Of a stretch of DNA of 64,000 nucleotides, positions 17,781 through 18,358 are shown one piece after another (position 1 is the first letter of the stretch; each line of letters starts with the position of its first letter). The notes under the pieces were generated by a model, which was not told the origin of the DNA, ran no database searches, and worked only from the letters and a program-made list of their open reading frames with translations. Origin of the DNA: Antechinus flavipes (lineage: Eukaryota); the NCBI RefSeq assembly GCF_016432865.1, contig NC_067398.1:726330001-726394000 (forward strand), given 5' to 3'. Position numbers and translations under genes: made by a program.

Positions 17781-18071
17781 GTTCCGAGGTCACTCGCAGG
17801 TAGAGGAGGTGGGAGACCATGTGACTGGAGGAGAATCTGCTGTGCCGCTGTGTGGGGTGCACAGCCCCGGGGCCCTCCCCCGCTCCTGAATGCCGGCCCG
17901 CTGGGCCCCCTTCCCCAGGCGCTGGGGAGCGGTTCAGGGGGGCCGAGGCCTCAGGGCAGGTCGGAGCCCCCCCGGCCCGTGACAGCCCCTGCGCTGGGGC
18001 TGCCGCTATGGACCCTGAGCCGGCCCGACCCGCGGTCACTCTGAGCCGGCCCCCCCGCCCCTCCCGGCGCC
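17781..18071 (+). other. ADORA2A: ADORA2A 5'UTR part of the first coding exon
   Basis: Pyrimidine tract TTTTCTTGGGATGTTTTGTTTCCTAG ending at 17780, 291 nt upstream of the ATG. Confidence 0.6.
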
Positions 18072-18358
18072 ATGGCCCTGGCCATCTCCTGGGACGTGGT
18101 CTACATCGTGGTGGAGGTCGCCATTGCCGTGCTGGCGGTCCTGGGCAACGTGCTGGTGTGCTGGGCCGTCTCCATGAACACCAACCTGCAGAACGTCACC
18201 AACTACTTCGTGGTGTCCCTGGCGGCGGCCGACATCGCCGTGGGGGTGCTCGCCATCCCCTTCGCCATCACCATCAGCACCGGCTTCTGCGCCGCCTTCC
18301 ACGGCTGCCTCTTCATCGCCTGCTTCGTCCTGGTGCTCACCCAGAGCTCCATCTTTAG
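18008..18358 (+). CDS. out-of-frame overlapping uORF (uORF5-like), 116 aa, [13 protein letters not shown]...PELHL
   Basis: ATG 64 nt upstream of the A2A start, strong Kozak context (G-3, G+4), open until TAG 18356-18358. Translation is not demonstrated. Confidence 0.5.

What the first reader, a model, noticed from the sequence alone, without database searches (positions are those of the whole stretch)
18008..18358. ADORA2A looks dual-coding: a uORF5-like overlapping reading frame in a marsupial
Seen: an ATG in strong Kozak context (GCCGCTATGG) 64 nt upstream of the receptor ATG and out of frame with it, open for 116 codons through TM1-TM3 ([29 protein letters not shown]...HPELHL), rich in Arg, His and Gly. 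Established (recalled, verify): rodent Adora2a has an inhibitory out-of-frame uAUG at about this distance whose overlapping product 'uORF5' has been reported. Recalled, unverified: the human 5'UTR begins its equivalent ATGGACCGTGAG (MDRELAQPAS), similar to [10 protein letters not shown] here in the part not constrained by the receptor frame. Inference: this would extend the arrangement to the therian ancestor. The frame ends only because one Phe codon is TTT instead of TTC (ATC TTT AGC gives TAG), unusual in this GC3-rich exon.
Basis: partly seen in the sequence, partly recalled or inferred. Interest (0 to 1): 0.7.

Follow-up and report, generated by a model that had tools for sequence, protein, structure and literature searches.

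The report
Conserved overlapping upstream ORF in ADORA2A
The upstream start codon 64 bases before the adenosine A2A receptor start is real and conserved from a skink through platypus and marsupials to rodents, but here it reads a different frame from the rat 'uORF5' protein, so it looks like an old brake on receptor translation and not a conserved second protein.

Summary
The ATG at 18008 has G at -3 and G at +4. It lies 64 nt upstream of the ADORA2A start (18072), is out of frame, and is open for 116 codons to the TAG at 18356-18358. The window is a dasyurid-like marsupial. The 116-codon openness is not evidence: receptor GC3 is 0.98, and 88% of synonymous resamplings give an ORF at least as long.

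The start codon itself is the real signal. ATGG is the only invariant run of three or more columns in the leader across 13 amniote sequences. Rat mRNA contigs show this same uATG at -65 opening a 134-codon ORF, the reported length of uORF5.

Murids carry a 1-nt insertion, so rat uORF5 reads the other alternative frame. The marsupial peptide matches it at only 7 of 22 N-terminal residues. ORF length ranges from 54 to 276 codons across the 13 sequences. Receptor synonymous sites are not more constrained in the overlap, and the leader codons show no coding pattern.

The best reading is an amniote-wide out-of-frame overlapping uORF that gates receptor translation, not a conserved dual-coding protein. 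No RNA or ribosome data could be obtained for this species.

The parts
17779..17780 (+). Probable 3' splice acceptor (tttcctAG|gttcc) of the exon that carries the common 5' leader and the receptor start. The exon would begin at 17781.
   Evidence: Conserved in marsupials. It is homologous to the rat acceptor TTTACAG|GTACC, where three of four rat mRNA contigs leave genomic colinearity about 243-246 nt upstream of the ATG. Its use in this species is inferred, not shown.
17819..17824 (+). Minimal 'start-stop' uORF (ATG TGA), with A at -3.
   Evidence: GGCCATGTGA is present in all five Australidelphian sequences.
17890..17982 (+). Short uORF of 30 codons (MPARWAPFP...) in a weak context (T at -3, C at +4). 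Its stop lies 25 nt before the 18008 ATG.
   Evidence: The ATGC is invariant in all six marsupials. Its frame and stop position vary among species.
17996..18020 (+). Conserved block around the upstream start codon (GGGGCTGCCGCT ATG GACCCTGAGC). The -3 G, ATG and +4 G are invariant.
   Evidence: It is the most conserved stretch of the leader in 13 amniote sequences, and ATGG is the only invariant run of 3 or more columns.
18008..18358 (+). Out-of-frame overlapping uORF of 116 codons plus TAG. 21 codons lie in the leader and 95 overlap the receptor CDS, starting on receptor codon position 3.
   Evidence: The same 116-codon ORF occurs in Sarcophilus and Macrotis.
18042..18044 (+). TGA in the receptor frame, 30 nt before the receptor ATG. 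It closes any upstream initiation in that frame.
   Evidence: the ORF 17850-18044 ends here. T.A is invariant across all 13 sequences (TGA, or TAA in the skink).
18072..18409 (+). ADORA2A first coding exon (receptor ATG to the donor; GT at 18410-18411).
   Evidence: In one search the exon ends ...[10 protein letters not shown] + AG and the donor is GTGAGT.
18354..18358 (+). Phe codon TTT plus AG of AGC, which together make the uORF stop TAG (18356-18358), 51 nt upstream of the exon-exon junction.
   Evidence: TTT is shared with Sarcophilus and Macrotis. Koala, Dromiciops and Monodelphis read through this position (ORFs of 177, 177 and 276 codons).
21225..21954 (+). ADORA2A second coding exon (acceptor AG at 21223-21224, stop TGA at 21952-21954). 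The receptor is 355 aa.
   Evidence: It is 97% identical to Sarcophilus harrisii A2a.

Best explanation
The ATG at 18008 is the marsupial orthologue of a start codon fixed since at least the amniote ancestor. It begins an upstream ORF that is out of frame with, and overlaps, the ADORA2A start. A scanning ribosome that initiates there (G at -3, G at +4) passes the receptor AUG while elongating and terminates 284 nt inside the receptor CDS, so it cannot make receptor. Receptor output then depends on leaky scanning past this AUG, or on reinitiating ribosomes that skip it after the two short upstream uORFs (17819 ATG-TGA; 17890, 30 codons). What is selected is initiation at this site (position, context, overlap), not the peptide. 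The 116-aa Arg/Gly/Leu/His/Pro-rich product is most likely a by-product in marsupials. Shown here: the anatomy, orthology with the rat uORF5 start, conservation, the frame change, and the lack of a coding signature. Inferred: presence in the mature mRNA of this species, actual initiation, and repression of the receptor.
For: 1) The uATG with G at -3 and G at +4 is invariant in 13 of 13 sequences: the window, Sarcophilus, Macrotis, koala, Dromiciops, Monodelphis, seal, mouse lemur, armadillo, gerbil, rat, platypus and skink. ATGG is the only invariant run of 3 or more columns in a leader whose wider alignment averages 52% column identity. The annotated receptor start codon itself moves between lineages.
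2) The ORF is out of frame and runs past the receptor AUG in all 13. The frame is not fixed. The spacing mod 3 is 1 in marsupials, seal, lemur and armadillo, and 2 in murids (a 1-nt insertion about 20 nt after the uATG), platypus and skink.
3) ORF length varies: 54, 56, 116, 118, 134, 177 and 276 codons.
4) There is no extra constraint on receptor synonymous sites in the overlap. Marsupial columns with synonymous variation are 0.53 in the overlap against 0.41 elsewhere; non-murid eutherians 0.28 against 0.36 (not significant); murids 0.18 against 0.19.
5) For leader codons 2-21 in Australidelphians, the variable sites by codon position are 11, 6 and 10 of 20, and in 9 of 10 species pairs amino-acid-changing codon differences equal or exceed silent ones.
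6) Rat mRNA contigs carry this uATG in the mature, spliced leader and give exactly the 134-aa ORF reported as a detected protein, so the orthologous AUG is used in at least one species (PMC6761599; PMC9712206).
7) No Pfam domain, Rfam family or conserved RNA structure offers another reading.
Against: There is no RNA-seq, ribosome-profiling or reporter evidence for this species. The conserved block extends from about -12 to +13, which is wider than a Kozak context needs, so another DNA or RNA function is not excluded. The selection tests have low power (6 marsupials, 79 informative codons in the overlap). Repression by the rat uAUGs is recalled from the primary literature, which was not held in the library. 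The secondary sources I read describe the protein, not the repression.
Confidence: 0.65

Rival explanations
1. True dual coding in therians. The ORF that starts on receptor codon position 3 (116 aa here, 118 aa in seal, lemur and armadillo) encodes a functional basic protein that differs from murid uORF5.
For: The same frame is kept in all six marsupials and three non-murid eutherian orders. The uATG lies 64 nt upstream of the aligned CATGG site in most of them. The ORF ends near the end of exon 1 through independent T-ending codons: TTT|AGC in dasyurids and bilby, ATT|GAC in eutherians. The peptides are 76-77 of 111 identical between the window and the eutherians. The orthologous AUG yields a detectable protein in rat.
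Against: That peptide identity (about 69%) is below the identity of the receptor encoded by the same bases (about 92%), so receptor constraint explains it. Receptor synonymous sites, which are first positions of the alternative codons, vary as much in the overlap as elsewhere, or more. Length is 116, 177 and 276 aa within marsupials. Murids abandoned the frame through a 1-nt insertion. There is no Pfam domain. The open frame is expected from GC3 (P = 0.88).
Confidence: 0.1
2. The conserved 25-nt block is a DNA or pre-mRNA element, such as a transcription-factor site, a promoter element or an alternative CTGCAG| splice acceptor, and the ATG inside it is incidental.
For: Conservation runs from about -12 to +13 (GnGCTGCnGnT ATGGAC nnn GAGC), beyond what initiation context usually needs. 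CTGCAG directly upstream of the ATG looks like an acceptor in most species.
Against: The only uninterrupted invariant run is ATGG, while -4 varies (C, A or G), -2 varies (C or A) and -1 is C in Monodelphis. The dasyurids, this window included, have CCG in place of CAG, so the acceptor-like AG is lost here. Rat mRNA contigs run straight through the site. No covariation or stable consensus structure was found (-3.7 kcal/mol).
Confidence: 0.15
3. It is a chance ATG with no function in a GC-rich leader, and the long ORF simply reflects GC3 bias.
For: The length of the open frame is fully explained by composition.
Against: A neutral ATG would not stay invariant with its -3 and +4 context in 13 sequences spanning squamates, monotremes, marsupials and placentals while the surrounding leader diverges and other uATGs come and go.
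Confidence: 0.05

Closest known systems
Rat A2AR uORF5 (Lee et al. 2014, J Biol Chem 289:1257; read only through PMC6761599, PMC9712206, PMC5703645 and PMC7949122)
   Same: It has the same start codon by alignment: the last uAUG of the common leader exon, GC.GCT|ATGG, 64-65 nt before the receptor AUG. It is also out of frame and overlaps the receptor CDS.
   Different: Rat reads from receptor codon position 2, gives 134 aa rich in Ser, Pro, Ala and Trp, and ends 17 nt into exon 2. The window reads from codon position 3, gives 116 aa rich in Arg, Gly, Leu, His and Pro, and ends in exon 1. Only 7 of 22 N-terminal residues match. A murid 1-nt insertion causes the difference. In murids the open frame is longer than codon usage predicts (P = 0.014-0.023); here it is not.
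ATF4/ATF5-type leaders: a short permissive uORF followed by an inhibitory uORF that overlaps the main start out of frame (established knowledge)
   Same: The anatomy matches: a start-stop and a short uORF upstream, then a strong-context uAUG whose ORF overlaps the main AUG out of frame, with a non-conserved peptide.
   Different: Spacings are much shorter (25 nt from the uORF2 stop to the uAUG, 64 nt from the uAUG to the main AUG). Dependence on eIF2-alpha phosphorylation is untested for ADORA2A.
Other GPCR-gene alternative ORFs (AltB2R in BDKRB2, PEP7 in Agtr1a; PMC7949122)
   Same: It is an upstream or overlapping ORF in a GPCR mRNA, discussed in that literature as dual coding.
   Different: Those are proposed to act through the peptide. 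Here the comparative data argue against a conserved peptide.

Membership tests
Murid uORF5 alternative protein of the A2AR gene | Starts at the last uAUG of the common 5' leader exon, about 65 nt upstream of the receptor AUG, in a strong context | tested here: met
   The uATG aligns column for column with the rat and gerbil uATG. G at -3 and G at +4 are present in all. The spacing is 64 nt here against 65 nt in murids.
Murid uORF5 alternative protein of the A2AR gene | Out of frame with the receptor CDS and overlapping it | tested here: met
   64 mod 3 = 1. The ORF runs 284 nt into the receptor CDS.
Murid uORF5 alternative protein of the A2AR gene | Same reading frame relative to the receptor as rat uORF5 | tested here: not met
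   Rat and gerbil have spacing 65 (mod 3 = 2). The window and all other marsupials have mod 3 = 1. The murid insertion is visible at column 43 of alignment A3.
Murid uORF5 alternative protein of the A2AR gene | Protein similar to the 134-aa rat product | tested here: not met
   The best local alignment gives 7 of 22 identical residues, confined to the N-terminus. The composition also differs.
Murid uORF5 alternative protein of the A2AR gene | 134 codons, terminating just inside the second coding exon | tested here: not met
   Here the ORF is 116 codons and ends 51 nt before the donor of exon 1. Rat and gerbil have 134 codons and end at +17 nt in exon 2.
Murid uORF5 alternative protein of the A2AR gene | Protein detected in cells or tissue and raised by A2AR/PKA signalling | not testable with these tools
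   This is reported for rat only (PMC6761599). No marsupial data exist.
Conserved inhibitory overlapping uORF | The uAUG and its initiation context are conserved across distant taxa | tested here: met
   13 of 13 amniote sequences carry it. ATGG is the only invariant run of 3 or more columns in the leader.
Conserved inhibitory overlapping uORF | The ORF overlaps the main AUG out of frame in every lineage, whatever the frame | tested here: met
   In all 13 the ORF runs past the receptor AUG, in one or the other alternative frame and never in frame with it. The statistical power of 'never in frame' is low.
Conserved inhibitory overlapping uORF | The peptide sequence is not under selection | tested here: met
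   Synonymous variation is not reduced in the overlap. The leader codons show no third-position excess. Both frame and length change between lineages.
Conserved inhibitory overlapping uORF | The uAUG is present in the mature mRNA | tested here: inconclusive
   This is shown for rat (mRNA contigs L014-L017). For the window species it is inferred from the homologous acceptor at 17779-17780.
Conserved inhibitory overlapping uORF | It lowers translation of the main ORF | not testable with these tools
   This needs reporters or ribosome profiling. The rat 5'UTR repression is recalled from primary papers that were not held.
ATF4-type delayed-reinitiation leader | A short upstream uORF that permits reinitiation precedes the inhibitory overlapping uORF | tested here: met
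   ATG-TGA at 17819 and a 30-codon uORF at 17890-17982. Both start codons are conserved in marsupials.
ATF4-type delayed-reinitiation leader | The main ORF is induced when eIF2-alpha is phosphorylated | not testable with these tools
   There are no data.

The most novel reading that the evidence does not exclude
The ADORA2A leader carries an overlapping-uORF start codon that has been held in place for over 300 million years while its ORF switched between the two alternative receptor frames at least twice (non-therian to therian, then therian to murid). If so, the experimentally described rat 'uORF5 protein' is a murid-specific sequence built on an ancient translational control element. The short uORFs upstream may make that element an ATF4-like, stress-tunable switch for A2A receptor synthesis.
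Probability: 0.3. Interest if true: 0.6.

Novelty: new member of a known kind. Interest (0 to 1): 0.4.

Why it matters
ADORA2A is a major drug target (caffeine, istradefylline, immuno-oncology antagonists) and is a textbook example in the alternative-protein literature. One summary table lists uORF5 as conserved in human, chimpanzee, rat and mouse (PMC5703645). The comparison here separates two things that this literature merges. The start codon is very old and strictly conserved. The protein sequence studied in rat depends on a murid-specific 1-nt insertion and is not what marsupials, seal, mouse lemur or armadillo would make. This points functional work towards translational gating of the receptor. 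It also warns against carrying rat uORF5 protein functions over to other mammals without checking the frame.

Tried and rejected
The Rfam scan stopped at 18176, and Pfam was given 18008-18175 and 18218-18355 separately.
2) The primary uORF5 paper (doi 10.1074/jbc.M113.509059, PMC3894312) is not held, so I used only secondary descriptions.
3) Open-frame length as evidence is rejected (P = 0.88).
4) Suppression of synonymous sites in the overlap was not seen.
5) A coding pattern in the 21 leader codons was not seen.
6) Rfam gave only a sub-threshold mir-6131 hit at 17622-17721 (20 bits against a gathering score of 66), which I take as chance.
7) Pfam found nothing on the two marsupial peptide pieces or on rat uORF5.
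8) No conserved RNA structure was found around the uAUG: no covariation, -3.7 kcal/mol.
9) CTGCAG as a splice acceptor is rejected for this window, because the dasyurids have CCG there and rat mRNAs read through.
10) I considered RE1/NRSE, YY1, CTCF and E-box matches to the block by eye and saw none convincing. This was not a tool result.
12) Human sequence was deliberately not fetched or compared. None of the loci used is human.
The receptor was searched with exon 2 alone. Spliced continuations of the uORF were computed only inside local scripts, to locate stop codons.
14) The earlier notes of this scan did not bear on this finding.

Full report
WHAT IS THERE. The window carries ADORA2A followed by UPB1, GUCD1 (minus strand) and SNRPD3. 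The second coding exon (21225-21954) is 97% identical to Sarcophilus harrisii A2a, so the genome is a dasyurid-like marsupial. The receptor ATG is at 18072, the first coding exon ends at 18409 (donor GTGAGT), and the receptor is 355 aa. It is open for 116 codons to the TAG at 18356-18358, which is made by Phe codon TTT followed by AGC. The peptide has 24 Arg, 19 Gly, 18 Leu, 16 His and 15 Pro. Every descriptive statement of the finding is correct.

IS IT MORE THAN CHANCE? The open frame is not. Receptor GC3 is 0.98 and only 6 of 355 codons end in T. A stop in this alternative frame needs a T-ending codon, so the frame is almost stop-free. Resampling synonymous codons with the gene's own usage gives an ORF of at least 116 codons in 88% of trials (null median 376). 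The start codon is another matter.

COMPARATIVE EVIDENCE. Using A2a proteins and their cluster members, I fetched the loci of Sarcophilus, Dromiciops, koala, Macrotis, Monodelphis, platypus, gerbil, grey seal, armadillo, mouse lemur, a skink (Tiliqua) and Rattus. For Rattus I also obtained four spliced mRNA contigs. None of these loci is human, and human sequence was not fetched. All 13 sequences have the block G.GCTGC.G.T ATGGAC ... GAGC, with the ATG, G at -3 and G at +4 invariant. ATGG is the only run of three or more invariant columns in the 97-column leader alignment. By contrast, the annotated receptor start shifts between lineages. Other uATGs of the leader are conserved only within marsupials or within eutherians.

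LINK TO THE KNOWN uORF5. In the rat mRNA contigs the aligned uATG lies 65 nt before the receptor ATG and opens an ORF of exactly 134 codons in the spliced message. A 134-aa uORF5 translated from an upstream out-of-frame AUG of the rat gene is what the literature describes (PMC6761599; PMC9712206; PMC5703645). The primary paper was not held. Three of the four rat contigs splice into an acceptor about 243-246 nt upstream of the ATG (TTTACAG|GTACC). This is homologous to tttcctAG|gttcc at 17779-17780 of the window. By homology, therefore, the 18008 ATG lies in the exon common to all transcripts. For this species that is an inference.

THE FRAME IS NOT THE SAME. Gerbil and rat carry a 1-nt insertion about 20 nt after the uATG (column 43 of A3). 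Their ORF starts on receptor codon position 2. It runs through exon 1 and stops 17 nt into exon 2 (134 codons). Marsupials, seal, lemur and armadillo read from codon position 3. Platypus and skink read the murid-type frame but stop after 56 and 54 codons. Spliced lengths in the position-3 frame are 116 codons (window, Sarcophilus, Macrotis), 118 (three eutherian orders, stop at ATT|GAC), 177 (koala, Dromiciops) and 276 (Monodelphis). The window peptide matches rat uORF5 at only 7 of 22 N-terminal residues. It matches the eutherian position-3 ORFs at 76-77 of 111 residues, which is less than the 92% identity of the receptor encoded by the same bases.

TESTS FOR A SELECTED PROTEIN. Receptor third positions are first positions of the alternative codons, so selection on the alternative protein should depress receptor synonymous change in the overlap. 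It does not. In marsupials 53% of amino-acid-invariant degenerate codon columns vary synonymously in the overlap, against 41% elsewhere. In non-murid eutherians the figures are 28% against 36% (not significant), and in murids 18% against 19%. For the 20 leader-only codons in Australidelphians, the variable sites by codon position are 11, 6 and 10, and in 9 of 10 species pairs amino-acid-changing codon differences equal or exceed silent ones. Neither the marsupial peptide pieces nor rat uORF5 has a Pfam domain. One weak positive concerns rodents only: their 134-codon frame is longer than codon usage predicts (P = 0.014 and 0.023).

MECHANISM. The conserved properties are those of an inhibitory overlapping uORF: a fixed AUG in an optimal context, always out of frame, always running past the main AUG, with a free-floating peptide, frame and stop. 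Ribosomes that start at 18008 are lost to receptor synthesis. Receptor translation then needs leaky scanning, or reinitiation that skips 18008 after the conserved ATG-TGA at 17819 or the conserved weak-context 30-codon uORF at 17890-17982, whose stop lies 25 nt before 18008. This layout resembles ATF4-type leaders, but stress dependence is untested. No Rfam family and no conserved RNA structure explain the block. A DNA-level function of the 25-nt block cannot be excluded.

LIMITS. 

VERDICT. This is the orthologue of the rat uORF5 start codon and it is older than Theria, but the marsupial ORF is not a uORF5-like protein, and nothing indicates a conserved second protein. It is a new, deeper-branching member of a known kind (a conserved overlapping uORF). 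The useful side result is that the rat uORF5 sequence is specific to murids among the species sampled.

Noticed in passing
window 17819-17824: An ATG-TGA 'start-stop' minimal uORF with A at -3. The GGCCATGTGA motif is present in all five Australidelphian sequences.
   Followed up: partly
window 17890-17982: A 30-codon uORF (MPARWAPFP...) whose ATGC is invariant in six marsupials. Indels change its frame, so it ends either upstream of the 18008 ATG or at the conserved TGA at 18042.
   Followed up: partly
window 18072-18409 and 21225-21954: Extreme GC3 of the receptor CDS: 0.98 here, 0.99 in Sarcophilus and 0.98 in Monodelphis, against about 0.8 in eutherians and Macrotis. Only 6 T-ending codons remain here. 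One of them, TTT at codon 95, makes the uORF stop and is shared with Sarcophilus and Macrotis.
   Followed up: partly
window 21805-21954: The receptor C-terminal tail is short. The protein is 355 aa here (354 in Sarcophilus), against 386-399 aa in other Australidelphians and about 410 aa in eutherians.
   Followed up: no
L008 and L013-L017 (gerbil, rat), about 20 nt after the uATG: A murid-specific 1-nt insertion (GGCCC-GGCC becomes GGCCCAGGCC) flips the uORF5 frame. The resulting 134-codon frame is longer than codon usage predicts (P about 0.02), which hints at lineage-specific retention in murids.
   Followed up: partly
window 18356-18358 against the junction at 18409: The uORF stop lies 51 nt upstream of the last exon-exon junction, at the edge of the 50-55 nt rule for nonsense-mediated decay. 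It lies 30 nt upstream in non-murid eutherians, in the last exon in murids, koala, Dromiciops and opossum, and 232 nt upstream in platypus.
   Followed up: no
window 13560-14260, 41500-42600, 44240-45300: Long tandem or low-complexity repeat tracts give spurious long ORFs in several frames. A run of N lies within 1401-2042.
   Followed up: no
window 32800-47000, 51900-52800 (-), 59400-59560: Synteny matches eutherians: UPB1 exons, GUCD1 on the minus strand and the first SNRPD3 exon follow ADORA2A.
   Followed up: no
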